Shown: positions 1,169-63,649 of the stretch, in pieces
How the letters are laid out: every line of letters starts with the position of its first letter
Numbering within the stretch: position 1 is the stretch's first letter
The notes under the pieces: generated by a model
The model's database searches: none
What the model was told of the DNA's origin: nothing
What the model saw: only the letters and a program-made list of their open reading frames with translations
IMG/VR virus record: IMGVR_UViG_3300028840_001395
Span: 124,001-188,000 of that record
DNA: 64,000 bases
Reading direction: 5' to 3' (one strand)
Made by a program: the position numbers and the translations under genes

Positions 1169-1200
1169 CTAGACTACTCTCGCGTGTGCCCGTGTAAGCC
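1169..1200 (-). promoter_or_regulatory. Class I bipartite phage promoter motif
   Basis: GGCTTAC-N14-GAGTAGTCTAG on the minus strand, upstream of the Cys-cluster/nadD pair. Confidence 0.75.
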
Positions 1201-1504
1201 CCTGGATGGTCGCCATCACCCTGCCGGGGATATTCTGCTCGTAGGGGCGATAGTCCCAGGCGAGCATCTTGGTGAGCCTCTCCTGGTCGAAGGTGTCCTC
1301 GGAGCCTTCCGGATTCCACTCCTGGTCGAAGATGACCAGCATGGTCTTGATGAACTTCCGCAGGTAGTGGTGAACCGAAGGATCTCCGGAGATCTTCCTG
1401 AACACGTCCATGTACTCTACGGGAATGGCGTGGAAGCCCCGCCAGGTGAACGGGAGGAACGCTTGACTACCATCGGGGAGGGTCTTCTGAATCAGATGGT
1501 GCAT
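1169..1504 (-). CDS. Hypothetical protein
   Basis: Co-oriented, fits operon spacing, GC3-biased codons. Confidence 0.6.
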   Translation of the reverse strand: MHHLIQKTLPDGSQAFLPFTWRGFHAIPVEYMDVFRKISGDPSVHHYLRKFIKTMLVIFDQEWNPEGSEDTFDQERLTKMLAWDYRPYEQNIPGRVMATIQGLTRAHARVV

Positions 1505-1517
1505 CCTCGATGCCCTT

Positions 1518-1958
1518 TCACATCAACTTCAAGTGTCCCGTGATCTCATCGATGGCCTTGGGGTGTGCCGGACCGATGGCCACACAGGTCTTGGTAGGTA
1601 CCCCGTGGAACTCCGTCGCCCCCGAATCAGTGATGACTGCCGTGGGGAATCCGAGTTTCTGGGACTCCTCCGCCAGGGCGAGAAGCTCCTCCTCGTCCTT
1701 GCAGCCCACGACGACCTTGGTGAACAGCCCCTTGATCCAGCCCTCCAACCCCGCCGTGTCCAGCATGACGATGAGACAGGCCATCTCCTTGGTCGTCCTG
1801 CCGGGATTCTGAGGGTCGGCATCGACCTCGACCATCCCGAACTCTCCCCGGTCAAGCAGCACCTTCATCGAGGCATGGGCCACCTGGGCGGCAATCTTGC
1901 CCTTCCGCATCTTGAGATCCTTGCGGACGACGATCACCTGCTTCATCTCATCGGCCAT
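1518..1958 (-). CDS. pth2: Peptidyl-tRNA hydrolase, Pth2 family
   Basis: KQVIVVRKDLKMRKGKIAAQVAHAS, TKVVV, ITDSGATE, TCVAIGP...IDEITGHLKL; start reassigned to ATG at 1958. Confidence 0.92.
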   Translation of the reverse strand: MADEMKQVIVVRKDLKMRKGKIAAQVAHASMKVLLDRGEFGMVEVDADPQNPGRTTKEMACLIVMLDTAGLEGWIKGLFTKVVVGCKDEEELLALAEESQKLGFPTAVITDSGATEFHGVPTKTCVAIGPAHPKAIDEITGHLKLM

Positions 1959-1959
1959 G

Positions 1960-2652
1960 CTACACCTCGAAGAAGATGCCGTCCTTCTGGAGTCGGCGGT
2001 ACGTGGGGCAGTCGAAGCGGTAGAGCTTCGGAGGACGCCGCCCGATGCTCTTGGTCTCCCCGGTCTCGACCAGGACACCCAGGCGGAGCACCCGGCGGCG
2101 GAAGTTCCGCTTGTCGAGCTTGCGGTCGAGGATGATCTCGTACACTCGCTGCAACTCGGTCAGGGTGAACTCCTCGGGCAACAGGTCGATGCCCAGCGGC
2201 TGCCAGCGGACCTTGGAACGAAGCCGCTCCAGGCCCACCGCCAGAATCTCGGCATGGTCGAAGGCCAGCGCACCCTGGATCTTGTCGGCGGGTGCCCAGG
2301 TGACGCCCTGGGCGTCGCTGCCAGGTTGAAGCTGCATCCCTGTCCTGACCAGCGCCAGGTAGGCGGTCGAGATGTAGTGCCCTCGGGGATCCCGCTTGGG
2401 CTTGCCGAACGTGTAGAGCTGTTCCAGGTAGGAGAGCTTGAGCCCTGTCTCCTCCTGAAGTTCCCGCTTGACCGCTGCATCGAGGTCTTCATCCGGCTCC
2501 ACATGGCCCCCAGGGAGCGCCAGGAGGCCCTTGAACGGCTCCTCTCCCCTTTGGATGAGCAAGACCTGGAGTTCCTCGAAGTCGGCGCTCACACCGAAGA
2601 CCACGGCGTCCACGGTGTTGACGGCTCGCGGGTACTCGTAGGTGTAGCTCAC
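1960..2652 (-). CDS. nrtR: NrtR-family Nudix + winged-helix regulator
   Basis: Intact Nudix box GHVEPDEDLDAAVKRELQEETGL; AFDHAEIL; C-terminal FTLTELQRVYEIILDRKLDKRNFRRRVL wHTH. Confidence 0.9.
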   Translation of the reverse strand: MSYTYEYPRAVNTVDAVVFGVSADFEELQVLLIQRGEEPFKGLLALPGGHVEPDEDLDAAVKRELQEETGLKLSYLEQLYTFGKPKRDPRGHYISTAYLALVRTGMQLQPGSDAQGVTWAPADKIQGALAFDHAEILAVGLERLRSKVRWQPLGIDLLPEEFTLTELQRVYEIILDRKLDKRNFRRRVLRLGVLVETGETKSIGRRPPKLYRFDCPTYRRLQKDGIFFEV

Positions 2653-3302
2653 GATGCCCCCCGGACAGGCACCTTGCGAATGGCACCCTCCTCGTTGCGC
2701 TCGACGGCCACGTAGACGACCTCGGTGGCGACCACGGCGACGGGAGCCGCTTCACCATCGCGGGAGAACTCCACTTCGACCTTGATGGTCAGGGAGGTGT
2801 TGCCGATCTTCACCAGCGTCGTGTAGAGCGTCACCACGTCACCGATAGACACGGGATGGTTGAACTCGATGCCGTTCATGAAGCGGGTGGCAACATCATG
2901 CTTCGTGTGCTTGCGGGCCTCCACGGCTCCTGCCAGATCGATCTCCGCGAGGATAGCTCCGCCGAATACCTCGCCCCGGTGGTTGGTGTCCTTGGGCAGC
3001 AGGATGCGCCGGATGGCCAGATTCCGCCGAGGGGGCTCCTCCTTGAGCTTCTGTGGCTCATCGTGCATCTGGCACTCGGAGACGTGGGTGAGCATGTGCC
3101 GGTATCCCTCCCGTTCGGGGTCAGGTTCGGTGAGGGTGGTGGCCCAGCACCGACAGTCCGGGTCGCCACAGTCGAGGTCGCAGTAGTCGAAGGCATCCTC
3201 GTCCTCGGGCTGGATCTCGACCCGCAGGCGGTTGGAGTTCTTGATGTAGCCGCTGCCCGGAGAGGGCCACACCCAGTCGCCCGGCTTTCGGCGCTTACTC
3301 AT
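2649..3302 (-). CDS. Hotdog-fold acyl-CoA thioesterase (YciA-like) with N-terminal Cys/His-rich extension
   Basis: PKDTNHRGEVFGGAILAEIDLAG motif and PVSIGDVV; start at MSKRRKPG. Confidence 0.8.
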   Translation of the reverse strand: MSKRRKPGDWVWPSPGSGYIKNSNRLRVEIQPEDEDAFDYCDLDCGDPDCRCWATTLTEPDPEREGYRHMLTHVSECQMHDEPQKLKEEPPRRNLAIRRILLPKDTNHRGEVFGGAILAEIDLAGAVEARKHTKHDVATRFMNGIEFNHPVSIGDVVTLYTTLVKIGNTSLTIKVEVEFSRDGEAAPVAVVATEVVYVAVERNEEGAIRKVPVRGAS

Positions 3303-3342
3303 CTTCGACCTCCAGTTCCTCAATGTACCCCTCGGGGCCACC

Positions 3343-8923: not shown

Positions 8924-10000
8924 TCACTCGGGCACCTGGGGAAGCTCATCGGTCAGGAAGCCCGCCTTGACCAGTTCCGCTCGCGTCCCCAGCATCGGGA
9001 TGTTCGGGTTCGCCTTGTGTCTCGTCTGCGCCTCGGCCCGGCGGGCAGCCTTGAGGAAGTCCAGCACGAACGCCTTGGGCACCGGCTGCCAGAGGGCGCT
9101 CTTCACCGCGAAGCCTTCGAGGGACTTCCAATCCGGCTCCGTGAAATCGAACAGCACCTTGTCCACCTGGACGAGGCTGCTGTAGCGCACATCGTAGTAG
9201 GGGATCTCCACATCGAGGAACCGGCTCACCCGCTCGATGGTGCCGATACGCATGATGTCGCCCGTGTCCGGGTTGATGCGCCCGTAGGTGAAGGGCATCC
9301 CGAGCCAGTCGAGAAGCTCCTTCTCGTCCGAGTGCCCATCCCCGGTCCCCCACAGGTCGGGCGACGGGGTGGCCTCGATGATGGGCCGGACGACATCGTA
9401 GATGCCCAGCTTGTTGCCCAGGTAGAAGGCAAGCTGGTACACCTCGGTCTTGCTCAGCATGGCGAGCGGATTGGTGTCCACCTCGCCGTCGCCGCCCTTC
9501 TGGTAGAAGCGCAGCCAGCGATCCTCGCACTCGTTGCCGGTCCCGTGCCGGATGCCCCCGCCCATGATGCGGTTGTAGGCACGACCGATGGGTGCCCGCA
9601 GGGTCGAGCGGATGCTTCCGAGGATGGTCGGGTCGGCATCCATGCGTTCCTTGATCTCGGTGCCGATGTCGGTGCCGAAGTGGGCGTCCACGAGCGACGT
9701 GATCACCTCGTCACGGACGTTGTTGAAGATGTCGTTGAAGTGTCCGATGGCCAGAGGCACCTGGAGAGCCTCGCACAGCTCCCGCGCACGGTCGGTCTGC
9801 TGGAAGCTCGTGTGGATGATGGTGTGGTCGAAGATGCAGTTCTCCGGCCCCAGCGCCTTCACGAGCAACATCGTCATCACGGCGGAGTCGATGCCCCCGG
9901 AGATGTCGAGCTGCGCCTTCGGAACCCCGAACTCGTCGTGATACTCACGGATGGACTGCATCCGGTCACGAGCGAGTCCCTTGGCATCAATGACAGGCAT
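8924..10000 (-). CDS. nadE: NH3-dependent NAD+ synthetase (single domain, no glutaminase)
   Basis: ISGGIDSAV ATP-PPase loop, GTGNECED, YQKGGDG, PLAMLSKTEVYQLA, PSPDLW; ATG at 10000 overlaps the pncB stop (TGATG). Confidence 0.9.
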   Translation of the reverse strand: MPVIDAKGLARDRMQSIREYHDEFGVPKAQLDISGGIDSAVMTMLLVKALGPENCIFDHTIIHTSFQQTDRARELCEALQVPLAIGHFNDIFNNVRDEVITSLVDAHFGTDIGTEIKERMDADPTILGSIRSTLRAPIGRAYNRIMGGGIRHGTGNECEDRWLRFYQKGGDGEVDTNPLAMLSKTEVYQLAFYLGNKLGIYDVVRPIIEATPSPDLWGTGDGHSDEKELLDWLGMPFTYGRINPDTGDIMRIGTIERVSRFLDVEIPYYDVRYSSLVQVDKVLFDFTEPDWKSLEGFAVKSALWQPVPKAFVLDFLKAARRAEAQTRHKANPNIPMLGTRAELVKAGFLTDELPQVPE

Positions 10001-11466
10001 CACATACCTCCCCGGACACGCGCCCACTGCTCCTTGATCATGGCCTTCAGCGCCCTCGTGTGTTCCGACACCTCGGGCTTCACGGTGTCCGTGTGGGTCA
10101 GCCGGTGGAAGCCCTTCGGCTCGGACTCCCACTCCTGGCCGACGACGCTGCGCTTGCCATCCTCACTGCGGAAGATCACGGGCTTGCCGGGCAAGGACAT
10201 CTTGCCCTCGACGGCGAACTTCATCACGTCGCGCTCGCCCGTCCGGCACAGCTTGTAGACCGCCGACACGGCGTTCCGGGTGAACTTGTGCGGGGAGGGG
10301 TCGCAGACGAGGAAGCCGCCAGAGCCGTAGCCCGACTGCTCGGGAGTGATGCCCAGCGACTCGCAGAGCACCTCCTGCGCTCGCGCCTTGAGGACGTTGA
10401 TTCCGTCCATGAACATGTAGAAGGGATTGACGTGTTCCTCGGCCTCGGCCTGGACGTACTCGCGGAGCTGAGCCTCCTGGTCGCCCGAGTCGAAGCGGAC
10501 ACCGTGCTGGATGTCCGGGCGTTCCTTCATCGCCTGGACGGCGGCGGGGATGCCGACCTCCATCGCGTCGAAGGTGTCGAACAGGTAGGAGGGCCGCTGC
10601 GGGCGCATGTCCCGGATGGCCCGGAAGGCGTCCAGGTCGTTGCCCCACCGCTGCTGATGCTCGTGGCCCGTGGTGCCGACCGGCACCATCCCCATCTGCT
10701 TCGCGCCCCAGACGTTCGATGTCCGGGTGATGCCCGCCTCCTTGCAGGCGGACAGGGCGATCTCGTGCATCTGGAGGCAGGTCGCGCCTCGCATCCCGAC
10801 CTCGAAGATGCGGTCGCCGCCGACGATGTTGACCAGCCCCTTGGCGTTGTGGAGCACCTTCATGAAGTAGTCGTCCTGCTGGACGGTGATGTCCCGGTCA
10901 TCCTCGCGCTCGATGGCCTCGCAGGTGAGCCGGACGATCTCGGCCTCATCCTCGCAGGTGCAGCGGAACTCACGGGTGTCGTTGGTCAGCACCTCGGTTG
11001 CGATCTGGATGGGGAAGTGCAGGGCGATGGCCAGCGGCTCCAGCCACGACACCAGGAACGAGGGGCCGGTGATGGTGGCGATGGGTTCCCGTGCCATGAC
11101 CCAGGTGCCAGGAGGCGCACAGGTGACCTCGATGTCCTGCTTGAGCGCGACCTCCATCGACTGCGACATGCCGTAGCCGAACATCCGGAGGTAGTCGTTC
11201 TCACCGGGCCAGATCTCGTCCGGCAGCAGCTCGCGGATGAGCAGGTTGAGGTCGAAGGGGATGTAGTGGGTGCCACGTCGGAAGGACAGGTAGAACGTCT
11301 CGCGCCGGAGGGGGAAGCCCGCCTGGGCCATCGAGAACTTGTAGCCGTCCGACATCAGCACGGACGGATCCTTGCCGTTGAGCATCCGCCCGGCGACATC
11401 GAACTCGATGCACTGGTCGGTTCCGACCCTCGCCAGTCTGCTCTGTCTCTTTGCTCTCTCGTTCAC
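10000..11466 (-). CDS. pncB: Nicotinate phosphoribosyltransferase
   Basis: DGYKFSM, EVGMRG, TSNV, GTTGHE, DTFD, GVRFDSGD, VYKL, K..LPGK; adjacent pncA/nadE favour a nicotinate (not nicotinamide) PRTase. Confidence 0.85.
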   Translation of the reverse strand: MNERAKRQSRLARVGTDQCIEFDVAGRMLNGKDPSVLMSDGYKFSMAQAGFPLRRETFYLSFRRGTHYIPFDLNLLIRELLPDEIWPGENDYLRMFGYGMSQSMEVALKQDIEVTCAPPGTWVMAREPIATITGPSFLVSWLEPLAIALHFPIQIATEVLTNDTREFRCTCEDEAEIVRLTCEAIEREDDRDITVQQDDYFMKVLHNAKGLVNIVGGDRIFEVGMRGATCLQMHEIALSACKEAGITRTSNVWGAKQMGMVPVGTTGHEHQQRWGNDLDAFRAIRDMRPQRPSYLFDTFDAMEVGIPAAVQAMKERPDIQHGVRFDSGDQEAQLREYVQAEAEEHVNPFYMFMDGINVLKARAQEVLCESLGITPEQSGYGSGGFLVCDPSPHKFTRNAVSAVYKLCRTGERDVMKFAVEGKMSLPGKPVIFRSEDGKRSVVGQEWESEPKGFHRLTHTDTVKPEVSEHTRALKAMIKEQWARVRGGM

Positions 11467-11468
11467 CT

Positions 11469-11511
11469 TTAGTGTCCCTCCGACACCTTTATAGTGTCAC
11501 CCGCACACTTT
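11469..11511. promoter_or_regulatory. Two tandem NrtR-box-like palindromes
   Basis: ttaGTGTC-cctcc-GACACctt (11469-11489) and ataGTGTC-acccg-CACACttt (11491-11511); each has a GT-N7-AC core; centres 22 bp apart. Confidence 0.7.
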
Positions 11512-11516
11512 GTCAA
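11488..11516 (-). promoter_or_regulatory. Host sigma70-type promoter of the pncB operon
   Basis: TTGACA-N17-TATAAA on the minus strand. Confidence 0.8.
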
Positions 11517-11534
11517 GCACTTTCTTCGTGCCAC

Positions 11535-11566
11535 CTAGACTACTCTCGCGGGAACACAGATAAGCC
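11535..11566 (-). promoter_or_regulatory. Class I bipartite phage promoter motif
   Basis: GGCTTAT-N14-GAGTAGTCTAG. Confidence 0.75.
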
Positions 11567-12172
11567 TGAAATTCCCGGCTCCCCTCCCATCCTCGGAGGG
11601 TCAGGCAATCCGTTGTGTTTCCAGATGAGTCGCATCAGTCGATCCTCGGCGTCCGCGACAACGGCCCAGGTCATGGCCACCGAGGACACCCCCTCTTTCT
11701 GGACGACTGCGGTGAGGAGCTTCCGGGCGTTCTCCTTCGCGTGACCCTGGAACAGGTTCCACAGGCTGCCATGCTCTCGTCCGGCGTCCATGAGGCGGTT
11801 GTATCGTTCGTGGCCTCGCAGGTAGCCGATGACGTGGACCAGGAGGTAGCGCCGGGGGTTGTCGCTGGGACGCTCGACACCAAGCTCCTTGTAGAGCCAG
11901 GTGAAGTAGAACGAGTGCTGTATCGACACCGTGGCCAGGCCGAGAGGCACCCTCTCGCTGATGAGCCTGTATTGCTCATCGTGAACGTCGCTGATCTGGA
12001 GGCACTGCAACATGAACTCGGGGTACACGCCCCTGATGTTGTTCAGCACCTCCTTCATGTAGATGCACGCTTCGCCCTGACGCTTGAGGTAGGCGTCCAT
12101 GTCGAGATTCTGTGCCCACTCGGGCGGGGACTTGGCGGGGATGTTGAAGTCGAGGTCTTTCATCAGAGGCAT
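11540..12172 (-). CDS. Hypothetical protein (210 aa)
   Basis: Co-oriented, overlaps the end of the CoaB-like gene. Confidence 0.65.
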   Translation of the reverse strand: MPLMKDLDFNIPAKSPPEWAQNLDMDAYLKRQGEACIYMKEVLNNIRGVYPEFMLQCLQISDVHDEQYRLISERVPLGLATVSIQHSFYFTWLYKELGVERPSDNPRRYLLVHVIGYLRGHERYNRLMDAGREHGSLWNLFQGHAKENARKLLTAVVQKEGVSSVAMTWAVVADAEDRLMRLIWKHNGLPDPPRMGGEPGISGLSVFPRE

Positions 12173-13287: not shown

Positions 13288-13946
13288 TTCGCAACCTCCA
13301 GATGCTTCGGCTTGGTGCAGACCCAGCGCAGCCCCCGCCCGTGCTCCTCCAAGAGCACCTTGAATCCCGCCAGGCAGAGGAGGCGGCGGATGTCCTGAGC
13401 CGGGTGATACCGGAAGTGGGTCACGTCCCAGCCCGTCCCCAGCCGCCACTGGAGATGGACGACATGCTCGCCCCAGGCGTAGTGGCACTCGAAGTATCGG
13501 GAATCCCTGAACTTGTAGGACTTCCATGAGTAGGGCCGGGGCTGGATGAACGTGCTGAACACGAACTGACCGCCGGGCTGCAGGACGCGGAAGACCGCCG
13601 GAATGACGAGCGATGGATTGAGGTAGCCCATCGCCTGTCGGCAGACGACCACATCAAAGGTGTCACGCGGGAAGTAGATGGCCAGGTTCTCGGCCCGGCC
13701 CCGGACGGTCTCGATCTCCTTGTGCTTGCAGCGAGGGTTGATATCGAACAGCGTGATGTCTGAGGGATTCTGGCGACCGGCTTCCCAGCCTCGGCAGTGA
13801 GCGGCCAGCGACACGGCTCCCGTTCCCCCGCAGAGGTCGAGCAGCTTGAGGCCCGGCTCGTAGTCCACCAGGTCGAGCAGGTCGTGGGGCTGTTGCAGCC
13901 AGGGGGCGTAGATGTCGGCGTACTTCTCGGTGGTGCAGTTCAGCAA
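13284..13946 (-). CDS. Class I SAM-dependent methyltransferase
   Basis: LLDLCGGTG motif I, FDIN, FDVVVCRQAM, VLQPGG. Confidence 0.85.
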   Translation of the reverse strand: MLNCTTEKYADIYAPWLQQPHDLLDLVDYEPGLKLLDLCGGTGAVSLAAHCRGWEAGRQNPSDITLFDINPRCKHKEIETVRGRAENLAIYFPRDTFDVVVCRQAMGYLNPSLVIPAVFRVLQPGGQFVFSTFIQPRPYSWKSYKFRDSRYFECHYAWGEHVVHLQWRLGTGWDVTHFRYHPAQDIRRLLCLAGFKVLLEEHGRGLRWVCTKPKHLEVAK

Positions 13947-14140
13947 TCGATGACCTCCAGGGCTGCTCGGACGCGCTCGACACGCTCCGGGTTGGAACCC
14001 CCGTCATAGGCGGCAGCGACCAGGGCGGCAGCCCCTCGCAGGAGAACGCGGAAGCCTTCTCCCAGGACTCGATCACCGACCTTGGCGTGGGCCATGATCT
14101 CGCGGACGACTAGGTTGAGGGTCTGACGGGGTTGAGCCAT
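13940..14140 (-). CDS. Hypothetical protein
   Basis: GGAG RBS, co-oriented. Confidence 0.5.
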   Translation of the reverse strand: MAQPRQTLNLVVREIMAHAKVGDRVLGEGFRVLLRGAAALVAAAYDGGSNPERVERVRAALEVIDC

Positions 14141-14196
14141 CTGTCTATCTCCTTCCCCTGCCCGAAGTCGGGCGGGGAGGTCAGCACCAAGTCATG

Positions 14197-14757: not shown

Positions 14758-14771
14758 GTCATTACCTCCAC

Positions 14772-14803
14772 CTAGACTACTCTGCCAGGGTGGAAAGTAA
14801 GCC
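14772..14803 (-). promoter_or_regulatory. Class I bipartite phage promoter motif
   Basis: GGCTTAC-N14-GAGTAGTCTAG followed by a GGAGG RBS and the macrodomain ATG. Confidence 0.8.
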
Positions 14804-17191: not shown

Positions 17192-17213
17192 TGTTCGATC
17201 CTCCTTGGATCCT

Positions 17214-18789: not shown

Positions 18790-18821
18790 CTAGCCTACTC
18801 TGTCGAGAGCCGAAGTAAGCC
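18790..18821 (-). promoter_or_regulatory. Class I bipartite phage promoter motif (variant GAGTAGGCTAG)
   Basis: GGCTTAC-N14-GAGTAGGCTAG upstream of rIIB. Confidence 0.7.
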
Positions 18822-21317: not shown

Positions 21318-21349
21318 CCAGACTACTCTCGTCCCTGTCTAAATAAGAC
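21318..21349 (-). promoter_or_regulatory. Class I bipartite phage promoter motif
   Basis: GTCTTAT-N14-GAGTAGTCTGG. Confidence 0.75.
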
Positions 21350-22320: not shown

Positions 22321-22438
22321 CTAGACTACTCTGGCCCAGGGCGAAATAAGACCCCATCTGAAATAAAAAGTACGCGCCCGCGTAGGCGCTTTTTTCGCGC
22401 GAAAGGGTCTTATCTCGGGCCGGGACAGAGTAGTCTAG
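22321..22438. promoter_or_regulatory. Back-to-back divergent class I promoters forming a ~38-bp inverted repeat
   Basis: Minus copy 22321-22352 and plus copy 22407-22438, both GTCTTAT-N14-GAGTAGTCTAG; marks the minus-to-plus gene-orientation switch. Confidence 0.8.
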
Positions 22439-25297: not shown

Positions 25298-25578
25298 GCA
25301 AGATCACCTGGGAACCTGTCCACCCCATCCACCACAACAAGCGAGCCGGAGGCAAGCTCCCCAAGAGCTACACCGAGGTCGCCCATATCGGGGATGTGAT
25401 TCTGTTCAAGAGCAAGACCCGCATCCGAGCTGGACTACCGCTCACGGGCTGCGACATGACGGCCACGCCGAAGAAGGGTCAGACCCTCAACGAGGTCGCC
25501 AGAATCGTGGCCCGGCGGGTCCAGGCCGAGGTGGACATCCTGGCTCAACGGTTCCAGAGGGGCTTACTGCGGCCCTGA
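25294..25578 (+). CDS. Hypothetical basic protein
   Basis: ATGA overlap. Confidence 0.55.
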   Translation: MSKITWEPVHPIHHNKRAGGKLPKSYTEVAHIGDVILFKSKTRIRAGLPLTGCDMTATPKKGQTLNEVARIVARRVQAEVDILAQRFQRGLLRP

Positions 25579-25592
25579 ATGGAGTAGTCTGG
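25561..25592 (+). promoter_or_regulatory. Class I bipartite phage promoter motif
   Basis: GGCTTAC-N14-GAGTAGTCTGG. Confidence 0.75.
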
Positions 25593-28669: not shown

Positions 28670-28701
28670 GTCTTATCTCCCCGCGTGGGGGAGTAGTCTA
28701 G
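28670..28701 (+). promoter_or_regulatory. Class I bipartite phage promoter motif
   Basis: GTCTTAT-N14-GAGTAGTCTAG. Confidence 0.78.
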
Positions 28702-30843: not shown

Positions 30844-30875
30844 GGCTTACCCGTAGGTCCAATGGAGTAGTCTAG
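30844..30875 (+). promoter_or_regulatory. Class I bipartite phage promoter motif
   Basis: GGCTTAC-N14-GAGTAGTCTAG. Confidence 0.78.
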
Positions 30876-34751: not shown

Positions 34752-35789
34752 CTAGGCTTTCGTCTGCCTGCGCCAGTCAGCCGCCACCTGACGGATGAGA
34801 CTCATCCCTCTGCTCACCATGTTCATGCTGACCTGAATCAAGTCCGACAGCTCTGCCCGTGTGTACCCCTCCTCCACATAGGGCAAGAGCCGGAGAGCTA
34901 CCTGACCGTCCCTGGTCTGCTGTACCCGTGGGTCTGCCCGGATGAACTCCACCAAGGCGTTGGCTTCCAGACACTGGGCCTGACTGGGCTCCTGGCACCC
35001 TGTAGGGTTCGACAGGAGACTCGCACCCGAAGCCACGTCCACAGAGGTCAGGTCACCATGATCCCAGCCCGGTGCCCCTACCTGCTCGACAGCCCTCCGC
35101 CGGGTCATCCTCCGATGGTAGTTGGCCACGATGCAGCCACAGACCATGTGGACGTAGTGGCCGAAGGAGGACTTCCTGGAGTCCCAAGGGCACCGACCCT
35201 TGTTCCTCGACAGCAGACCCTTGTAGACCTCCTGCAACACGTCCTCGGGGTCATAGCCAGCAGCATAGACCCGCTGACCGAACCCAGCATAGAACAGCTT
35301 CGCCACCTCATGTGACCGATTCACCAGGTCAATACCCAGAGGTTGAGTCGAAGTTACGAAACTCGCGTCCGGCGCAGGGTCGAAGTTTGGAACTTCCGTG
35401 ACCGTGAGGGCCGGGGAAGTTTCGATAGGCATCCCGGAGGGCGTAGTTGCGAGGTCATCGGGAAGAAAGAGGTCGAGAGCGGGTACTATGGGTTGGTTGT
35501 GAGCGAGGGTGAGGCTTGGGGGGGCATGGCGGCCTGTCTTGAAGTATCGGTCGAAGGTCCAGTTGCGAGCGTTGGGGTGGCCGGTGATGGCGATGAGCAA
35601 CTGGCGTGCTGACGTGAAGGTCTGGACGGGGCCTCCCCCTGAAGCCAGGGAGGGTCGGAGTTGGAAGTCCCCGTCCGGTGTCAGAATCACTTTGTCTGCA
35701 CCATCCCTCCACCGACTGTAGAGATACTTCGACTTCGCAGTGCGGGTGCCTTCGCTTCGTTTTGCGCGAAGGTTTGACTTTCCGGGCAT
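34752..35789 (-). CDS. ECF-like sigma70-family sigma factor with N-terminal extension
   Basis: Region-2-like DPEDVLQEVYKGLL...WDSRKSSFGHYVHMVCGCIVANYHRR; region-4-like GYTRAELSDLIQVSMNMVSRGM. Confidence 0.65.
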   Translation of the reverse strand: MPGKSNLRAKRSEGTRTAKSKYLYSRWRDGADKVILTPDGDFQLRPSLASGGGPVQTFTSARQLLIAITGHPNARNWTFDRYFKTGRHAPPSLTLAHNQPIVPALDLFLPDDLATTPSGMPIETSPALTVTEVPNFDPAPDASFVTSTQPLGIDLVNRSHEVAKLFYAGFGQRVYAAGYDPEDVLQEVYKGLLSRNKGRCPWDSRKSSFGHYVHMVCGCIVANYHRRMTRRRAVEQVGAPGWDHGDLTSVDVASGASLLSNPTGCQEPSQAQCLEANALVEFIRADPRVQQTRDGQVALRLLPYVEEGYTRAELSDLIQVSMNMVSRGMSLIRQVAADWRRQTKA

Positions 35790-35954
35790 CCCCTGACCCC
35801 CTTCGGTCTAGCGACCCTCCGTTTTATGGCACGTCATTCATTTGCTCCCTCTACCATTCCTACGGATAGGGCGTTGGGCTGTCAAGAAATACGGTGTCAT
35901 CCGGGTGGGGTTTTTTGTCGCGTGGGGGTATCTTGGGCGTATGGAGGTGCATGG

Positions 35955-49781: not shown

Positions 49782-49813
49782 AGAGACTACTCCGCCGGAG
49801 TGCCGGGTAAGCC
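49782..49813 (-). promoter_or_regulatory. Class I bipartite phage promoter motif
   Basis: GGCTTAC-N14-GAGTAGTCTCT. Confidence 0.72.
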
Positions 49814-52330: not shown

Positions 52331-52920
52331 TTGCCCATCCCCATCACCACGCGGGGCTCGGGCAGGTCATCCCTCACGAACTCACAGCGACCATAGGTTG
52401 CCTCCGAGATCACGAAGGTCTGCTTCCCTGTTCGGATGACCGGGATGCCAAACAGCATATCTGGCTGGGAGTCAGGGGCATACTCGTGGCCCAGCGCCTC
52501 CTGAACCTTGTGTCTCATCAAGTGCCAGGAGAACTTGCCTCCCAGGTAGATCGTCCCCGGAGGGATGTCGGCCCTCTCCAGGGCGAGAACGGCCTCTCTG
52601 ACACGCATCAGGGCGTCCCAGGTGCATTCCCGGAGAGCCTGCTTGCGGTCTCGACGCTTCTGGGCCGTCCCATCCTCCTCGTAGCTCTGCTGGATGAAGG
52701 GCTCGATCTCGTCCCTGAACTCCCCGTCGTAGGCGAAGGCGGTGGTGATGTCGTCACGGGTCAGGTGGGGATAGACTTCGTGGACGGCCTGGAACCAGTC
52801 CGCCTGGGTTCCCACGTCGCGGGTGATTCTGGCGATGCGCCAGATGTAGCAGCCCTTGATGTGAGCGATACCCTTGGCGTCCTTCTGAACCTCGGGAAAC
52901 AGGTCTTCCTGGTCGCTCAT
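52327..52920 (-). CDS. DUF433-like N-terminal domain protein
   Basis: VYPHLTRDDITTAFAY; GGAGG RBS. Confidence 0.55.
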   Translation of the reverse strand: MSDQEDLFPEVQKDAKGIAHIKGCYIWRIARITRDVGTQADWFQAVHEVYPHLTRDDITTAFAYDGEFRDEIEPFIQQSYEEDGTAQKRRDRKQALRECTWDALMRVREAVLALERADIPPGTIYLGGKFSWHLMRHKVQEALGHEYAPDSQPDMLFGIPVIRTGKQTFVISEATYGRCEFVRDDLPEPRVVMGMGK

Positions 52921-53462
52921 CTCTTCCTCCCGTGGCCCAGGATTCCGTGGAGTTCGTCTCGCAGGGACTCCGCTTCCTTGATGATCTCGATGGCCTTGTC
53001 CACGCACTCGGCGTGGGTCGGGCTGCCGGGCAGCGGGACGGCCTCGGCCAACCCCTGCAGCAGGTTCTCGTAGTGATGGAGAGTGGCCCGAAGCTCTCGC
53101 TCCGACTGGGACTTCCCTGCCGGGGTCTCGCTCTGGTCGGCACCGAGGAGCGCGATGATGTTGTCAGCGGCCTCCTTCAGGTCGGAGTGGTCGAGATAGC
53201 CCTCGGGAGTCCGCTTCTCGACCAACTTCATCTCACCCGGCCCCAACGTGTCGCCCGGATCCTCGCTGTCGAGCCACTCGATCAGGGCCTCGACGCACTC
53301 CTCCGAGTGCGGGGCCTCGTTGCCCTGGGGACAGTCGTGAAAGAGCGGGCAGCCCGTGAAATGAACCGGACAACCTCCGAACCGGCCCGCAATCGAGGAC
53401 TCCCAGGTGAGCCGACACGTCTCCACCACGTTGCGAACCAGGATGCTGTCACGGCGGCTCAT
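52917..53462 (-). CDS. Hypothetical protein
   Basis: GGAGGT RBS after a class I variant; CP.H..GCP...DCP. Confidence 0.6.
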   Translation of the reverse strand: MSRRDSILVRNVVETCRLTWESSIAGRFGGCPVHFTGCPLFHDCPQGNEAPHSEECVEALIEWLDSEDPGDTLGPGEMKLVEKRTPEGYLDHSDLKEAADNIIALLGADQSETPAGKSQSERELRATLHHYENLLQGLAEAVPLPGSPTHAECVDKAIEIIKEAESLRDELHGILGHGRKR

Positions 53463-53479: not shown

Positions 53480-53511
53480 CTATACTACTCCGACCAGGGG
53501 GTGCGTAGCCC
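53480..53511 (-). promoter_or_regulatory. Class I motif variant
   Basis: GGGCTAC-N14-GAGTAGTATAG. Confidence 0.6.
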
Positions 53512-56944: not shown

Positions 56945-57630
56945 TCGGCGGGGATGTTCTTGTCCATCAGGTCATCCCCGTCGTACTCCCGTTCCAACAC
57001 CCCGTCGTGGATGAGCAACTCCAGTTTCGGCCCACAGCCGTTCTCCCGGCCTGGGAACCACGTCCAACCCACCCGGAACCAGCAGTCCGGGTGCCTGTTG
57101 GGATGCGGGACGACCCTCGCTCCCATCCAGGGTGTACGTTCTATACCGAGTCCTCCTACGCTGGTGTAACTACTTTCCAGGTCGCAGAGCAGATGCGAGT
57201 TGAGAATGGCCACTAGACGGCCCTGGGGCAGCCAGAGAGGCCCTTCGTCGGTGTCGAGGTGGATATCACCCGCCGCCCGGTAGATGCCCGACAGACCGCT
57301 CTCTGGAGCACTGAAGCTCCGGTCGAAGATGGTCTGGGCCAGGGAGCACCAGCCGATGAAGTCCTGTTCAGTCAGGTTGACCCGTCCACAGAGGCTCCGC
57401 AGCAGGTAGCCGTTGATCGAAGCTCGGAGGATGACGTACTCGCCCGTTTCGTCCAAGACCATCGGGCCTTCCACCACGAGGTTGCGGGCGACGATCTTGG
57501 CTTCGAGATACCCTGACCGAGGTTTCTCGAAGTGCGGCTTGCGGCCATGCAGGACTTCACCGAAGGTCTCCCGCATCGTGCGGCAGAACAGGTCACGCAG
57601 CGGGTCGTCCAGTGGGATGGTGACGCTCAT
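56902..57630 (-). CDS. DFxGW-family paralogue
   Basis: RETFGE...QDFIGWCSLA. Confidence 0.65.
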   Translation of the reverse strand: MSVTIPLDDPLRDLFCRTMRETFGEVLHGRKPHFEKPRSGYLEAKIVARNLVVEGPMVLDETGEYVILRASINGYLLRSLCGRVNLTEQDFIGWCSLAQTIFDRSFSAPESGLSGIYRAAGDIHLDTDEGPLWLPQGRLVAILNSHLLCDLESSYTSVGGLGIERTPWMGARVVPHPNRHPDCWFRVGWTWFPGRENGCGPKLELLIHDGVLEREYDGDDLMDKNIPAEWHTWRTEEEASIL

Positions 57631-58229
57631 TCGCTGATGGGTCGGAGGCAGCCCAGTCGAATCATGCGGGGGATGTTGGAGATGCTGTCGCTCTTGCTCG
57701 GGGTAATCCACGGCCCCCGGTCACTCCCGAAGTGAAGCCGGATACGGCGACCGTGACCGTATCCGGCCACCTGAACCCGGTCACCCTTCTTGAACCGCAC
57801 CGATGTCTGGGAGGGCTCGTCGTAGATGCCGAAGGTCTTGACCACATGAAAGAGCTGCCCCTCGGTGGAGATCCGGTCATACTCGGTCTTGACCTTGTAA
57901 ATCCACCCCTGAAAATCCGACCAAGATGAGTTCCGGAGGGCCGAACGGTCAAGCTCCTCGACCCGCTGTGGGGAGGAATCCCGGCGATAGAAGATGGCCA
58001 CGGCGGCGTGGTCATTGATGGAGATCTTCACCTTGTACTGGTCATCCAGGTCGCCCCGGAGGATGAACATGCCGCTCTGCCCACCATCCTCCCACTTGAA
58101 GTCCCGAGCGCAGTCATCCCCGAACACAGAGCACACCAGGTCAGCCACCTTGGCCAAGAACGGCTCCATCGCCCCCGGATGGGGCTTGATGACCAGACCT
58201 GGATTCAACGCCAGGGGCACCATTGTCAC
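57627..58229 (-). CDS. DFxGW-family paralogue
   Basis: CSVFGD...WSDFQGWIY; HVVKTF module. Confidence 0.65.
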   Translation of the reverse strand: MTMVPLALNPGLVIKPHPGAMEPFLAKVADLVCSVFGDDCARDFKWEDGGQSGMFILRGDLDDQYKVKISINDHAAVAIFYRRDSSPQRVEELDRSALRNSSWSDFQGWIYKVKTEYDRISTEGQLFHVVKTFGIYDEPSQTSVRFKKGDRVQVAGYGHGRRIRLHFGSDRGPWITPSKSDSISNIPRMIRLGCLRPISE

Positions 58230-58245: not shown

Positions 58246-58277
58246 GTAGACTACTCTGTCGGAAGGGAAATTAAGCC
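58246..58277 (-). promoter_or_regulatory. Class I bipartite phage promoter motif
   Basis: GGCTTAA-N14-GAGTAGTCTAC. Confidence 0.72.
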
Positions 58278-62048: not shown

Positions 62049-62066
62049 GATCTTCCTCGACGTAGT

Positions 62067-62092
62067 GGTTCTACAAGGCCATCCCTATAGGG
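62067..62092 (-). promoter_or_regulatory. Class II motif copy (CCCTAT-N12-GTAGAACC)
   Basis: Matches the copy at 56472. Confidence 0.55.
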
Positions 62093-62095
62093 CAA

Positions 62096-62890
62096 TCAAG
62101 GGGCAATCGCCCTGGGACTCACCTTGACCGGATCCTCACTGAGCCGAAGATGGTCAAAGATCGCCTTGATGTAGAGCCGCTTGAGCAACTTCTGGGCTCG
62201 CTCGATGAAGGTGTCGTCCGACCCCCGGAACGTGATCTCGCCCTTCCGAGACAAGGTGTCCGTCCCGACCATAATCCTGTAGGCCCACTGGAAAGGCTGT
62301 TCACCCATGAAGCGGTTGTGAATCCGGCCCACGACGTTACCTTCGACGGCTCCGTTGACCTTGAACAGCATCGAGACGGGCTTGGTCGTGTCGTCGGTGT
62401 GGTTGAACATCCACTTGACGGTCATGTCGTCAGCCACGTAGCGGATGATCTCCTGCGGGGCCTTCCCGCACTGGCGGAGGACTTCCAACGCCCCTCGAAT
62501 CATGGCGTCGTTGTGGTGTCCCTGGTAGCCGTCCGGGAACAGGTCTGCCGGATCCATCATGCCGATCAACGTCTGCTGGGCCAGTTGGGCGATGCTCTCC
62601 CAGATGTAGGACAGCCAACCGATGAGGTCGGCCTCGGTACGGGGCCTGTACGCGTCGAGACGCTTCGCAGCCTCGACGTTCCAGCGCCAGCGACCACCCG
62701 CCTTCCACTCGACGCGGGCGACGTGGCTGGTCAGGTCGGTGTGCAGCAGGATGAAGTGCTTGCCGACGCGGAACGCCTCCGCGCCCTCCTTGTATTGATT
62801 CTTGTCGAACAGGGCGGTGCCGTCGTCTTTCTCGGCTCCAGGGAAGATGCTCCGGATGATACGACCACCCTCGTCCATTCGGATGGTCAT
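62096..62890 (-). CDS. DFxGW-family paralogue
   Basis: RSIFPG...ADLIGWLSY; ATGA overlap. Confidence 0.65.
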   Translation of the reverse strand: MTIRMDEGGRIIRSIFPGAEKDDGTALFDKNQYKEGAEAFRVGKHFILLHTDLTSHVARVEWKAGGRWRWNVEAAKRLDAYRPRTEADLIGWLSYIWESIAQLAQQTLIGMMDPADLFPDGYQGHHNDAMIRGALEVLRQCGKAPQEIIRYVADDMTVKWMFNHTDDTTKPVSMLFKVNGAVEGNVVGRIHNRFMGEQPFQWAYRIMVGTDTLSRKGEITFRGSDDTFIERAQKLLKRLYIKAIFDHLRLSEDPVKVSPRAIAP

Positions 62891-63603
62891 TGCTCCGCCC
62901 TCCACAGGCTGTCGAGGCGCTCGATCTCCGGCTTGGTGATCTGGCCCGTCAGGCGGCTGTTCTCCCGCTGGTCCTTGTACATATCCGCCCACTGGGGGTC
63001 GGACTCCGCCTTCTCCTCCGGGTCTGCCAGACCCTCATCTACCGCCGCCTCCATCGGGGACTGGGGACAACGCCAGCCGTTCTCATCCGTGAGCATCCAC
63101 AGGAGCTTCTGGCGCTCCTCGGGATCCTTGACGTGCTTGATGTCGGCTTCCATCAGGATTGGCCATGCTTCGCCGCAGTCGTAGCACATGTAGGGCACTG
63201 GCTTGGTGACGTGCCCGTTGGTGATGCTCCGGCACGTCCGGCGGCGTCCGCCCCGCAGCGCGAGCCAGTTGAGGATGACCCGCTCCCACTCCCACTCGGG
63301 GCCACTCACGCTGTAGTTGAAGCCGATCTTGGTCGTGCCCTTGCCGTCGTGGTAGAAGATCTCCTTCGGCCCGACACAGAGGATGCTGGACGTATCCCCC
63401 CGCTGGATGGACGCACGGACATCATCCAGGGTGCCCCCGTTGTCGAGGATATGGCCATACATGAAGTTGGTTTCGGCCCACCTCTGGAAGTGCTCGCTCT
63501 CGGCCAGGATCTCCGTCCAGGGGCGCATGTGTTCGCGCAGGAAGGCGGCGAACAGGTCGCGGGCCTTCTTCGACTTCATGGTCACAGAGATCGAGTAGCC
63601 CAT
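62887..63603 (-). CDS. Hypothetical protein
   Basis: GGAGGT RBS after a class I promoter. Confidence 0.7.
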   Translation of the reverse strand: MGYSISVTMKSKKARDLFAAFLREHMRPWTEILAESEHFQRWAETNFMYGHILDNGGTLDDVRASIQRGDTSSILCVGPKEIFYHDGKGTTKIGFNYSVSGPEWEWERVILNWLALRGGRRRTCRSITNGHVTKPVPYMCYDCGEAWPILMEADIKHVKDPEERQKLLWMLTDENGWRCPQSPMEAAVDEGLADPEEKAESDPQWADMYKDQRENSRLTGQITKPEIERLDSLWRAEQ

Positions 63604-63617
63604 GTGGACACCTCCAC

Positions 63618-63649
63618 GTAGACTACTCCGAAGGCAGGTCCGATAAGCC
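63618..63649 (-). promoter_or_regulatory. Class I bipartite phage promoter motif
   Basis: GGCTTAT-N14-GAGTAGTCTAC. Confidence 0.75.

What the first reader, a model, noticed from the sequence alone, without database searches (positions are those of the whole stretch)
1169..63649. At least 14 copies of a fixed-spacing bipartite motif GKCTTAY-N14-GAGTAGTCTAG
Seen: copies at 1169, 11535, 14772, 18790, 21318, 22321, 22407, 25561, 28670, 30844, 49782, 53480, 58246 and 63618, plus weaker ones at 37272 and 59262. All have a 14-nt spacer, point in the direction of the downstream genes, and several are followed by a GGAGG RBS. The motif is unlike sigma70 consensus. Inference: it is a phage-specific promoter class defining a regulon, most simply read by the ECF-like sigma at 34752..35789 or by a phage RNAP encoded elsewhere.
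Basis: partly seen in the sequence, partly recalled or inferred. Interest (0 to 1): 0.72.

Follow-up and report, generated by a model that had tools for sequence, protein, structure and literature searches.

The report
Huge-phage promoter class, sigma-like readers
The repeated two-part motif is real and is very probably the promoter of about 64 early-type transcription units in a 436-kb phage; related giant phages share its layout, and a phage-made sigma-like protein probably reads it, though which one is not settled.

Summary
All 14 listed copies are at the stated coordinates (0.01 expected by chance). The two "weaker" ones are a different element, and there is one more copy with a 15-nt spacer.

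The window lies in a complete 435.8-kb virus record that carries 64 copies. Each copy points at the gene downstream. In 43 of 64, a Shine-Dalgarno-led start codon follows within 30 nt. There are no copies in the tail/baseplate block.

Relatives at 70-87% DNA identity keep both boxes and the spacing while the spacer sequence drifts. Four more distant huge phages have the same layout, [5-mer]-N16-GTAG. Their -35 boxes differ by lineage: GGCTTAY, GACTTAC, GGATCAT, GGTAAC, GGCTTGG.

So the conserved -10 is G(A/C/G)GTAG, not a sigma-70-type TAnnnT. TCTAG is peculiar to this lineage.

No phage RNA polymerase was detected. The ORF at 34752-35789 is a real, divergent ECF-like sigma that Pfam does not detect but profile and fold searches do. 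It has its own TTGACA-type promoter.

A second sigma-like protein and a tandem sigma-region-4 protein are also conserved in these phages. One lineage has the motif but no detectable homologue of the ECF-like sigma in its incomplete record.

The promoter reading is well supported. The assignment to that particular sigma is plausible but unproven. No transcript data exist.

The parts
1169..1200 (-). motif copy, exact; followed by GGAGG and ATG 17 nt later (small Cys-rich ORF)
11535..11566 (-). motif copy, exact. A TTGACA-type promoter follows in tandem, then the NAPRTase-like gene 10000-11466 and the NAD synthase gene 8924-10000.
14772..14803 (-). motif copy, exact; 14 nt before the Macro-domain gene 14197-14757
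18790..18821 (-). motif copy, 1 mismatch; 26 nt before the rIIB-like gene 17738-18763
21318..21349 (-). motif copy, 1 mismatch; heads two small ORFs and the rIIA-like gene 18790-20943
22321..22352 (-). motif copy, exact, GTCTTAT subtype. It is the left arm of a divergent pair and lies 26 nt before the ArdC-like anti-restriction gene 21350-22294.
22407..22438 (+). motif copy, exact, GTCTTAT subtype. It is the right arm of the divergent pair. A 194-nt leader precedes the HD-phosphohydrolase-like gene 22633-23163. A GC palindrome flanked by T runs (22374-22389) lies between the two arms.
25561..25592 (+). motif copy, 1 mismatch
28670..28701 (+). motif copy, exact; 105-nt leader before gene 28807-29529
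30844..30875 (+). motif copy, exact; heads genes 30952-34092
49782..49813 (-). motif copy, 2 mismatches; 15 nt before gene 49434-49766
53480..53511 (-). weakest copy, 3 mismatches (-35 box GGGCTAC, -10 GAGTAGTAT); 17 nt before gene 52917-53462
58246..58277 (-). motif copy, 2 mismatches; 22 nt before gene 57627-58223
63618..63649 (-). motif copy, 1 mismatch; 14 nt before gene 62887-63603
34752..35789 (-). gene 'E': a 345-aa divergent ECF-like sigma. It has a conserved N-terminal extension, sigma2 at about residues 155-236 and sigma4 at about residues 287-344. It is a candidate reader of the motif.
35856..35885 (-). sigma-70-type promoter of gene E: TTGACA-N17-TAGGAA(T), about 65 nt before its ATG

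Best explanation
The motif is a promoter. Its -35 box is GGCTTAY (GTCTTAT at divergent pairs). Its -10 box is GAGTAG, exactly 14 nt downstream of the 7-mer, which equals CTTAY-N16-GTAG. Transcription probably starts at the conserved GTG, 6-8 nt after GAGTAG. That gives very short leaders that begin almost at the Shine-Dalgarno sequence.

About 64 such promoters drive the early-type and accessory part of a 435.8-kb myovirus-type phage genome. Their genes include an anti-restriction protein, rIIA/rIIB, a Macro domain protein, NAD and CoA metabolism genes, tRNAs and the tmRNA. The tail/baseplate block has none.

No phage RNA polymerase is detectable. The most likely mechanism is therefore host core RNA polymerase reprogrammed by a phage-encoded sigma-70-family protein that is itself made from a host-type TTGACA promoter. 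This would be a cascade: host sigma, then phage sigma, then this regulon.

My first candidate is the divergent ECF-like sigma at window 34752-35789 (about 0.4 on its own). It is followed by the 382-aa sigma-like protein at genome 63762-64910 and the tandem sigma-region-4 protein at genome 31416-31949.

Shown: the motif, its placement, its conservation, and the sigma-like nature of the candidates. Inferred: the transcription start, the dependence on a phage factor, and which factor it is. The confidence given is for 'promoter class read by host core polymerase with a phage-encoded sigma-like factor', not for one particular factor.
For: Counts and placement:
- 14 sites in the window against 0.01 expected.
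- 60 sites in the genome at up to 3 mismatches, plus 4 with a 15-nt spacer.
- At least 48 of 51 exact GAGTAGTCT boxes have CTTA at 14 nt.
- Every site is co-oriented with the downstream gene. Seven divergent pairs sit at strand switches.
- An SD-led ORF starts within 30 nt in 43 of 64 sites.
- Copies also precede the tmRNA, a tRNA(CUA) and tRNA arrays.

Conservation:
- In 55 pairings of G000 sites with their homologous regions in 70-87% identical relatives, both boxes and the spacing are kept while the spacer sequence diverges.
- The same [5-mer]-N16-GTAG layout with lineage-specific -35 boxes occurs in four other huge phages.
  - G001: GGATCAT-N14-GAGTAG, 52 copies; the related 32-nt pattern search gave 30 matches and 0 in its backwards control.
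  - G002: GACTTAC-N14-GCGTAGAT, 63 copies, found de novo.
  - G003: GGTAAC-N14/15-nRGTAG, 32 against 5 in the control.
  - G033: CGGCTTGGAA..CCGGTAGT, 37 copies.

Not a sigma-70 promoter:
- The generic sigma-70 scan finds none of the copies.
- The would-be -7 T is not conserved in G001.

No phage polymerase: no RNAP beta or beta' domains were found.

Gene E is sigma-like:
- It has 771 homologues, some named sigma24 family by JGI.
- Its family profile hits sigma-H structure 3mzy at E 1.1e-5 across sigma2-sigma4.
- 7 of 40 homologues hit Sigma70_ECF.
- The Foldseek top hits are all ECF sigmas, down to E 1.4e-4.
- E sigma2 is 72-78% identical across lineages that share the GTAG core, while sigma4 is 15-41% identical, in lineages whose -35 boxes differ.
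- E and the 382-aa protein each have their own TTGACA/TTGACT promoter.
Against: - There are no transcript data. No RNA run holds this DNA, so the TSS and the need for a phage factor are inferred.
- The E family was not found in G033, which has the promoter class. That search used hmmsearch --max on all six frames of 381 kb. The record is only 72% complete.
- The 382-aa sigma-like protein has homologues in all five lineages. The tandem sigma4 protein has r4_2 matches in all of them. Presence and absence therefore do not single out E.
- Sigma4 divergence does not track -35 divergence cleanly for either E or the 382-aa protein.
- Other phages with E-like proteins show a different motif (G009) or none (G021, and the 20-kb flanks of about 30 loci).
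- The downstream genes are early-type genes. In T4 such genes are read by the unmodified host holoenzyme.
Confidence: 0.7

Rival explanations
1. Same promoter class, but the reader is the 382-aa sigma-like protein at genome 63762-64910 ('D'), not the ECF-like sigma in the window. D has an N-terminal winged-helix domain, a sigma2-like region and a C-terminal sigma4.
For: - D has 45 homologues, many on huge-phage contigs up to 536 kb.
- The family consensus carries a sigma region-2-like DDHIQNC..LATY.VRSG.TDIR block and a C-terminal region-4 HTH.
- All 50 listed Foldseek hits of its AF2 model (pLDDT 86) are sigma factors or sigma-containing models, mostly group-1 sigmaA.
- It has its own TTGACT-N16-TGgTATTGT promoter.
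- Homologues are present in all five lineages with the promoter class, including G033, where E was not found.
- A 15-nt conserved downstream block in G000 would fit extended -10, -10 and discriminator contacts of a sigmaA-like factor.
Against: - The Foldseek E-values are weak (7.6e-3 at best). The family profile finds no sigma among PDB sequences.
- In G001 the only D-like ORF is 224 aa and 35% identical in sigma2, although the -10 box there is identical to G000's.
- D sigma4 is 29% identical in G033, whose -35 box is the most similar to G000's.
- The extended downstream conservation (TCTAG) is specific to the G000 lineage.
Confidence: 0.25
2. The ~177-aa protein with two sigma-region-4-like HTH domains (genome 31416-31949, 'C') is the specificity factor. 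It would act as a 'minimal sigma' or as an activator that binds the two boxes, which lie about two helical turns apart, and recruits host polymerase.
For: - C gives the strongest sigma signature in the genome: Sigma70_r4_2 at 1.1e-12, with two region-4 stretches, and PHROG 'sigma factor' families.
- ORFs of 204-313 aa (stop-to-stop) matching r4_2 above the family cut-off occur in G001, G002, G003, G009 and G033; in G033 one ORF gives two r4_2 matches.
- Minimal HTH-only sigma factors are described for RNAP-less jumbo phages (PMC7824862, read).
- The box centres are about 20.5 bp apart, so they face the same side of the helix.
Against: - C has no sigma2, so promoter melting would still need another sigma.
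- Orthology of the r4_2 hits in the other phages was not checked beyond the domain match.
- No promoter was identified for C.
Confidence: 0.12
3. The motif is a family of strong early promoters read by unmodified host RNA polymerase holoenzyme, with the host primary or an alternative sigma. T4 early promoters work this way: they are far more uniform than host promoters.
For: - The genes behind the motif are classic early functions: ArdC-like anti-restriction, rIIA/rIIB, tRNAs and auxiliary metabolism.
- Early genes must be read before any phage protein is made.
- In the G000 lineage the -10 block contains TAGTCT, which fits TAnnnT with a 16-nt spacer to CTTAYN.
- A/T-rich stretches lie upstream of the divergent pairs.
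Against: - The genome also carries canonical TTGACA-N16-18-TAnnnT promoters. They precede tRNA arrays, an HNH gene and both sigma-like genes. This suggests the host primary sigma uses the standard consensus.
- The -7 T is not conserved in G001 or G003. The invariant core is GTAG.
- The -35 box changes between phage lineages, which is not expected for one host sigma. Different hosts could explain part of this, however.
- The host is unknown, so its alternative sigmas could not be examined.
Confidence: 0.12
4. The motif is read by a phage-encoded RNA polymerase too divergent to detect. This could be a virion-packaged or non-virion multisubunit enzyme as in phiKZ, or a single-subunit enzyme.
For: - High information content and conservation that runs through the start region recall phage RNAP promoters.
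- Many large proteins in the genome have no PHROG match.
- The PF00940 search rang in no control genome, so it was uninformative.
Against: - No beta or beta' double-psi barrel domains were found (PF00562, PF00623).
- The motif is bipartite, with an unconserved spacer of fixed length and modular -35 variation. That is the signature of sigma-type recognition, not of a contiguous RNAP promoter.
- Three sigma-like proteins are present.
- RNAP-less jumbo phages with sigma factors are a described group (PMC7824862, read).
Confidence: 0.06
5. The motif is not a promoter. It would be an operator for a repressor or regulator, or an RNA-level signal such as a processing site or translational enhancer, placed next to promoters.
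For: Its fixed position just before the Shine-Dalgarno sequence would also suit a translational or processing signal. A palindrome lies between the divergent pairs.
Against: - In tightly packed arrays the motif starts at or within a few bases of the previous stop codon. It is the only conserved intergenic element, so no room is left for a separate promoter.
- It also precedes tRNA and tmRNA genes, which are not translated.
- Its two boxes are not complementary and the spacer is not conserved.
- There is no Rfam match in the window.
Confidence: 0.04

Closest known systems
ECF (group 4) sigma-dependent promoters, e.g. E. coli sigmaE or M. tuberculosis sigmaH (from general knowledge and the PDB entries hit)
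   Same: Two short, highly conserved boxes with a rigid spacer of about 16 nt between the -35 5-mer and the -10 core, a start about 6 nt after the -10, and high information content. The candidate reader E has an ECF-type sigma2-sigma4 fold.
   Different: - The boxes are CTTAY and GTAG, not the usual AAC and CGT/GTC.
- E carries a conserved ~150-aa N-terminal extension and a long sigma2-sigma4 linker, and fails Pfam thresholds.
- No anti-sigma partner or autoregulatory promoter was seen. E has a housekeeping-type promoter instead.
- The regulon is about 64 phage promoters, not a stress regulon.
Phage sigma cascades: Bacillus phage SPO1 gp28 (middle) and gp33/34 (late), and T4 gp55 (late) (general knowledge)
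   Same: A phage-encoded sigma made from a host-type promoter redirects host core polymerase to a uniform, phage-specific promoter class. Separate promoter classes serve different gene blocks.
   Different: The sequences are unrelated. Here there are at least two full sigma-like proteins plus sigma4-only proteins. The class is shared, with modular -35 changes, across several giant-phage lineages. Timing is not known.
T4 early promoters (host sigma70, unusually uniform consensus)
   Same: Many near-identical promoters in front of early-type genes such as rIIA/rIIB and tRNAs, with short spacing to the genes.
   Different: T4 early promoters keep a recognisable TATAAT with the -7 T and a TTGACA-like -35. 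Here the cross-lineage core is GTAG without a conserved -7 T. Canonical TTGACA promoters coexist as a separate, small class.
Group 3 sigma promoters of the sigmaB/sigmaF type (GTTTAA-N12-15-GGGTAT; general knowledge)
   Same: The box shapes and the 14-nt spacing resemble GKCTTAY-N14-G(A/G)GTAG.
   Different: This is a resemblance only. No group-3 sigma was identified in the phage, and the host is unknown.
Single-subunit phage RNAP promoters (T7-like)
   Same: Dozens of nearly identical copies, with conservation reaching the start site in this lineage.
   Different: T7-type promoters are one contiguous block of about 20 bp. Here there are two boxes with a free spacer, and no such polymerase gene was found.

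Membership tests
Bacterial-type (sigma-dependent) promoter class | Two conserved boxes at a fixed distance with an unconstrained spacer sequence | tested here: met
   Logo. The spacer is 14 nt in 60 copies and 15 nt in 4. The spacer sequence diverges between orthologous sites. The same spacing is seen in G001, G002 and G033.
Bacterial-type (sigma-dependent) promoter class | Placed upstream of genes and co-oriented with them, including at divergent strand switches | tested here: met
   There are 7 divergent pairs, and 43 of 64 copies lie within 30 nt of an SD-led start.
Bacterial-type (sigma-dependent) promoter class | Transcripts start a few bases downstream of the -10 box | not testable with these tools
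   No RNA run holds this DNA.
Housekeeping sigma-70 promoter (TTGACA-N17-TATAAT) | At least 9 of 12 consensus positions, with A at -11 and T at -7 | tested here: not met
   The generic scan finds none of the 8 copies in 11100-31000. The -7 position is not conserved in G001.
Sigma-70 family, ECF group (for the ORF at 34752-35789) | Sigma2 and sigma4 domains detectable by sequence profile | tested here: inconclusive
   The protein itself gives 0 Pfam and 0 PHROG families. The family profile hits sigma-H structure 3mzy at E 1.1e-5 over both domains. 7 of 40 homologues hit Sigma70_ECF and 3 of 40 hit Sigma70_r2.
Sigma-70 family, ECF group (for the ORF at 34752-35789) | Sigma2-sigma4 fold | tested here: met
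   In the AF2 model the sigma part has pLDDT above 90. The top Foldseek PDB hits are ECF sigmas (SigH, sigmaE, AlgU, SigK), with E from 1.4e-4 to 1e-2 over about 190 columns.
Sigma-70 family, ECF group (for the ORF at 34752-35789) | Binds core RNA polymerase and directs initiation at a cognate promoter | not testable with these tools
   The complex-prediction job was not folded and gives no evidence.
Phage-encoded RNA polymerase system | A gene for a multisubunit (beta/beta') or single-subunit RNAP in the genome | tested here: not met
   PF00562 and PF00623 gave no match while ringing in all 14 control genomes. The PF00940 search rang nowhere, so the single-subunit case is inconclusive. None of the 15 large proteins scanned (888-1783 aa) had an RNAP PHROG match.

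The most novel reading that the evidence does not exclude
A whole clade of giant phages (five lineages seen here, 188-536 kb records) shares one previously undescribed promoter architecture, [lineage-specific 5-mer]-N16-GTAG. It would be read by a sigma family so divergent that Pfam misses it: an ECF-like core with a conserved N-terminal domain and 771 homologues. The -35 box and sigma4 would have diversified lineage by lineage. That would amount to a natural set of orthogonal sigma/promoter pairs and a two- or three-sigma cascade that runs a 436-kb genome without a phage polymerase.
Probability: 0.35. Interest if true: 0.65.

Novelty: new member of a known kind. Interest (0 to 1): 0.55.

Why it matters
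Giant phages without their own RNA polymerase must reprogram the host enzyme, but almost nothing is known about their promoters because none of these lineages is cultured.

This work gives a concrete, testable promoter consensus. It covers about 64 transcription units in one complete 436-kb genome, and equivalent sets exist in four other lineages. It also gives a short list of three candidate specificity factors.

This lets the genome be divided into transcription classes from sequence alone. It allows reporter or in vitro tests with synthesized genes in a laboratory strain. The lineage-specific -35 boxes could yield orthogonal sigma/promoter pairs.

Tried and rejected
- Megablast of 16 kb against deposited phages found no match.
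- The exact motif scan of IMG/VR found only one AT-rich chance hit.
- Distant rIIA relatives (32-41% aa identity) lack the motif.
- RNA evidence: only DNA runs hold the sequence, and the 'RNA' candidates are related-protein leads only.
- Complex prediction of the ECF-like sigma with promoter DNA was not folded by the tool. It is not evidence either way.
- Nine metagenome contigs share an identical GGCTTATGAAGCTGCTTTCGAGAGTAGTCTGG. This is a conserved unrelated sequence that matches the pattern by chance, not a promoter copy.
- L108 was unrelated to this phage by tblastx, so it was not pursued. L049 and L114 gave no tblastx hits and carry one copy each; they could be fragments of relatives but were not followed up.
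- A 12-mer, CACAGAATCTAG, clustered near the sigma gene of G001. It turned out to be a local repeat, not the genome-wide class.
- Repeats in L136 and L138 are coding repeats.
- I tried to separate the sigma candidates by presence or absence and by sigma2/sigma4 against box divergence. The results conflict.
- The literature search for the motif string found only unrelated primer sequences.

Full report
**1. Observation**

The pattern GKCTTAY-N14-GAGTAGTCTAG, with up to 3 mismatches, occurs 14 times in the window, at exactly the listed coordinates. Dinucleotide shuffles predict 0.01 occurrences.

- The two 'weaker' sites at 37272 and 59262 are not copies. They belong to another recurrent element, GGGTA(G/T)nAT. 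That element has 23 copies in the genome, 16 of them intergenic, although only 9% of the genome is intergenic.
- One additional copy with a 15-nt spacer lies at 46073-46103 (-).

**2. Context**

The window is bases 124001-188000 of a 435,804-bp IMG/VR virus record. The record has direct terminal repeats, is rated 100% complete, and has 62% G+C.

- It encodes a tail sheath and a baseplate wedge in a block at about 321-405 kb.
- It also encodes a DNA polymerase and a DnaB-like helicase.
- It carries 70 tRNA genes and a tmRNA.

I called about 500 genes with a simple codon-usage model.

**3. Genome-wide behaviour of the motif**

- There are 60 copies at up to 3 mismatches, plus 4 with a 15-nt spacer.
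- At least 48 of the 51 exact GAGTAGTCT boxes have CTTA 14 nt upstream.
- The logo reads gGKCTTAYYT-N11-RGAGTAGTCTAGGTGAGGAGG, with an uninformative spacer.
- Every copy points at the downstream gene. Seven divergent pairs, of the GTCTTAT subtype, mark strand switches.
- In 52 of 64 copies an SD-preceded ORF of at least 30 codons starts within 80 nt. In 43 it starts within 30 nt. The median is 16 nt.
- Other copies precede the tmRNA, a tRNA(CUA), tRNA arrays, or a second promoter in tandem.
- The tail/baseplate block has no copy in the direction of its genes. The only one there (genome 391126, +) points against them, with no + strand gene for 14 kb.

Genes behind the motif in the window include:

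- an ArdC-like anti-restriction protein;
- rIIA and rIIB;
- a Macro domain protein;
- NAPRTase-like, NAD synthase and CoaBC-like genes;
- an HD phosphohydrolase;
- further along these units, a PP2C phosphatase and a WLM-type peptidase.

This is an early or host-takeover and accessory gene set.

**4. Conservation**

An exact-pattern scan of metagenome contigs returned the source contig. It also returned about 40 short contigs from another set of samples. These are syntenic and 70-87% identical in DNA.

In 55 pairings of G000 sites with their homologous regions, CTTA and AGTAGTCTAG(GTG) are kept and the spacing is kept, while the spacer sequence changes freely. Part of this set was selected for containing one exact copy. 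However, many of the aligned sites were not the selecting ones.

More distant phages were reached through protein homology, not through the motif. Several of them have the same layout:

| Record | Size | Motif | Copies |
|---|---|---|---|
| G001 | 188-kb fragment | GGATCAT-N14-GAGTAG | 52, of which 50 with N14; the 32-nt pattern search gave 30 matches, control 0 |
| G002 | 536 kb (first 400 kb searched) | GACTTAC-N14-GCGTAGAT | 63, all N14, top hit of a de novo bipartite search |
| G003 | 402 kb | GGTAAC-N14/15-nRGTAG | 32 against 5 in the control |
| G033 | 381 kb | CGGCTTGGAA..CCGGTAGT | 37, against 1-5 at neighbouring spacings |

- Anchored on GTAG, the lineage-specific 5-mer sits at -21 in G000, G001, G002 and G033.
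- The same search on a block-shuffled genome gives at most 9.
- The invariant -10 core is therefore GTAG, preceded by two variable bases.
- TCTAG is specific to the G000 lineage.
- A conserved GTG five bases after GAGTAG is shared with G001. It is the likely start region.

This rules out reading the -10 as a sigma-70-type TAGTCT, because the -7 T is not conserved. A generic sigma-70 scan misses all copies.

G009 has a different bipartite motif (GTGTAA-N13-GTGCTAC, 40 copies). G021 has none.

**5. Who reads it**

No RNAP beta or beta' domain was found. The single-subunit RNAP search was uninformative. No canonical full-length sigma is detectable by Pfam or PHROG profiles.

Three divergent sigma-like proteins exist.

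*E, window 34752-35789 (-), 345 aa*

- It has no Pfam or PHROG hit itself.
- It has 771 homologues, some named 'sigma24 family' by JGI.
- A profile of 40 family members hits sigma-H structure 3mzy at E 1.1e-5 across sigma2 and sigma4.
- 7 of 40 members hit Sigma70_ECF.
- The AF2 model's best PDB matches are all ECF sigmas.
- It has its own TTGACA-N17-TAGGAA(T) promoter.

*D, genome 63762-64910 (+), 382 aa*

- It has 45 homologues, many on huge-phage contigs.
- It has a region-2-like block and a C-terminal region-4 HTH.
- All 50 listed Foldseek hits are sigma factors or sigma-containing models, though weakly.
- It has its own TTGACT-N16-TGgTATTGT promoter.

*C, genome 31416-31949 (-), 177 aa*

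- It consists of two region-4-like HTH domains.

A fourth small protein, at genome 241411-241926, carries a region-4.2-like helix like that of primary sigmas.

**6. Discriminating the candidates**

- E sigma2 is 72-78% identical across the lineages and sigma4 only 15-41%. This fits a constant -10 core and variable -35 boxes.
- D in G001 is only a 224-aa ORF, 35% identical in sigma2, although the -10 box there is identical to G000's.
- On the other hand, E is not found in the 381-kb G033 record, which has the promoter class. The search was hmmsearch --max on six-frame ORFs, and the record is 72% complete.
- D is present in all five lineages.
- r4_2 matches in ORFs of 204-313 aa occur in G001, G002, G003, G009 and G033, and the G033 ORF has two. 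These fit a C-like protein, but orthology was not checked.
- Sigma4 divergence does not track -35 divergence cleanly for either protein.

I therefore keep E as first candidate at about 0.4, D at about 0.25 and C at about 0.12.

**7. Mechanism proposed**

The host holoenzyme reads a small set of canonical TTGACA promoters. These precede the two sigma-like genes, tRNA arrays, an HNH gene and a DUF559 endonuclease gene.

A phage sigma-like factor then directs host core polymerase to the roughly 64 GGCTTAY-N14-GAGTAG promoters. Transcription would start at the GTG and give short SD-first leaders.

The structural and replication blocks carry a different, single-block element, TAG(C/A)-N4-5-(C/T)CTATA(C/A). 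Of 94 CTATA[CGA] sites, 62% are intergenic against the 9% expected. This may be the late class.

The motif statistics, placement and conservation are shown, as is the sigma-like fold of E and, more weakly, of D. The start site, the timing, the dependence on a phage factor and the identity of that factor are inferred.

**8. Comparison and novelty**

The system works like the phage sigma cascades of SPO1 and T4, and the promoter geometry is closest to ECF-type promoters. The box sequences are new, and no paper in the library mentions them.

RNAP-less jumbo phages that carry sigma factors, including 'minimal' HTH-only ones, are a described group (PMC7824862).

I file this as a new member of a known kind. 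The cross-lineage architecture and the Pfam-invisible sigma family are the parts that go beyond routine.

Noticed in passing
window 37285 (-), 53519 (+), 59279 (+); genome-wide 23 copies: A third promoter-like element, (CTTC)GGGGTA(G/T)nAT, which looks like an extended -10. Sixteen of 23 copies are intergenic, although only 9% of the genome is.
   Followed up: partly
genome 1-63 kb, 269-311 kb, 386-428 kb, e.g. G000:C1:115825, 124353 (window 353), 416790: A single-block element, TAG(C/A)-N4-5-(C/T)CTATA(C/A), lies 30-50 nt before start codons. It occurs mostly in structural and replication regions that lack the main motif, so it is a candidate late or middle promoter class.
   Followed up: partly
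window 37575-37625 (between genes 37374-37553 - and 37661-38200 +): Divergent TTGAC-type promoters overlap an inverted repeat, GCTTGACTTTCTTGTCAAGC, which looks like an operator. The surrounding 34-45 kb stretch of the window has no main-motif copy and contains the ECF-like sigma gene.
   Followed up: partly
window 25626-26174 (-), promoter 26181-26209: An HNH endonuclease gene on the opposite strand inside a + strand block, with its own near-consensus TTGACA-N17-TATCCT promoter. It is likely a mobile homing-type insertion.
   Followed up: partly
G000:C1:85246-122868 and 241943-242033: 70 tRNA genes and a tmRNA (tag ANDEAVLQAA) sit in arrays headed by the main motif in tandem with a TTGACA promoter. 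A tRNA with anticodon CUA (an amber suppressor type) lies directly behind a motif copy at 242267 and before a sigma-4.2-like protein gene. This might hint at stop-codon reassignment late in infection.
   Followed up: no
window 22352-22407 and six other strand switches (genome 98045-98088, 197490-197557, 230370-230411, 251122-251178, 270833-270835, 318706-318738): Divergent promoter pairs of the GTCTTAT subtype form a repeated cassette with A/T-rich tracts. In five of the seven a GC-rich palindrome or CGCGCG centre is visible between the two -35 boxes (for example GCGCCCGCGTAGGCGC at 22374-22389). At 270833-270835 the arms are only about 1 nt apart, so nothing fits there. The cassette is also conserved in the 70-87% identical relatives.
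   Followed up: partly
window 22439-22632, window 28702-28806, G000:C1:251210-251983: Long regions without an ORF lie directly behind motif copies: 194, 105 and 774 nt. The first about 40 nt of the third are nearly identical in a relative that otherwise diverges (L096). These may be non-coding RNAs or structured leaders.
   Followed up: no
G001 (L173-L182), e.g. 114001, 120539, 176335, 180125: In the 188-kb relative, about ten motif-driven leaders share a hairpin, GTGAGGGGCAAATGACCCCTGA, before the Shine-Dalgarno sequence. It is a conserved 5'UTR element of unknown role.
   Followed up: no
G009 (L266-L277): A 234-kb phage that has both E-like and D-like proteins uses a different bipartite motif, GTGTAA-N13-GTGCTAC (40 copies). 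Its -35 box resembles the TGTAAC box of some ECF sigmas.
   Followed up: partly
L055, L059, L060, L067, L069, L075, L077, L087, L090: Nine unrelated metagenome contigs share the identical string GGCTTATGAAGCTGCTTTCGAGAGTAGTCTGGTCGGAAGGCATGCAC. It is a conserved sequence of some abundant organism that matches the pattern by chance.
   Followed up: no
G000:C1:99430-100290 (+): A second ORF matches the N-terminal winged-helix part of the D family profile (E 6.7e-9). Counterparts exist in G001, G002 and G033.
   Followed up: no
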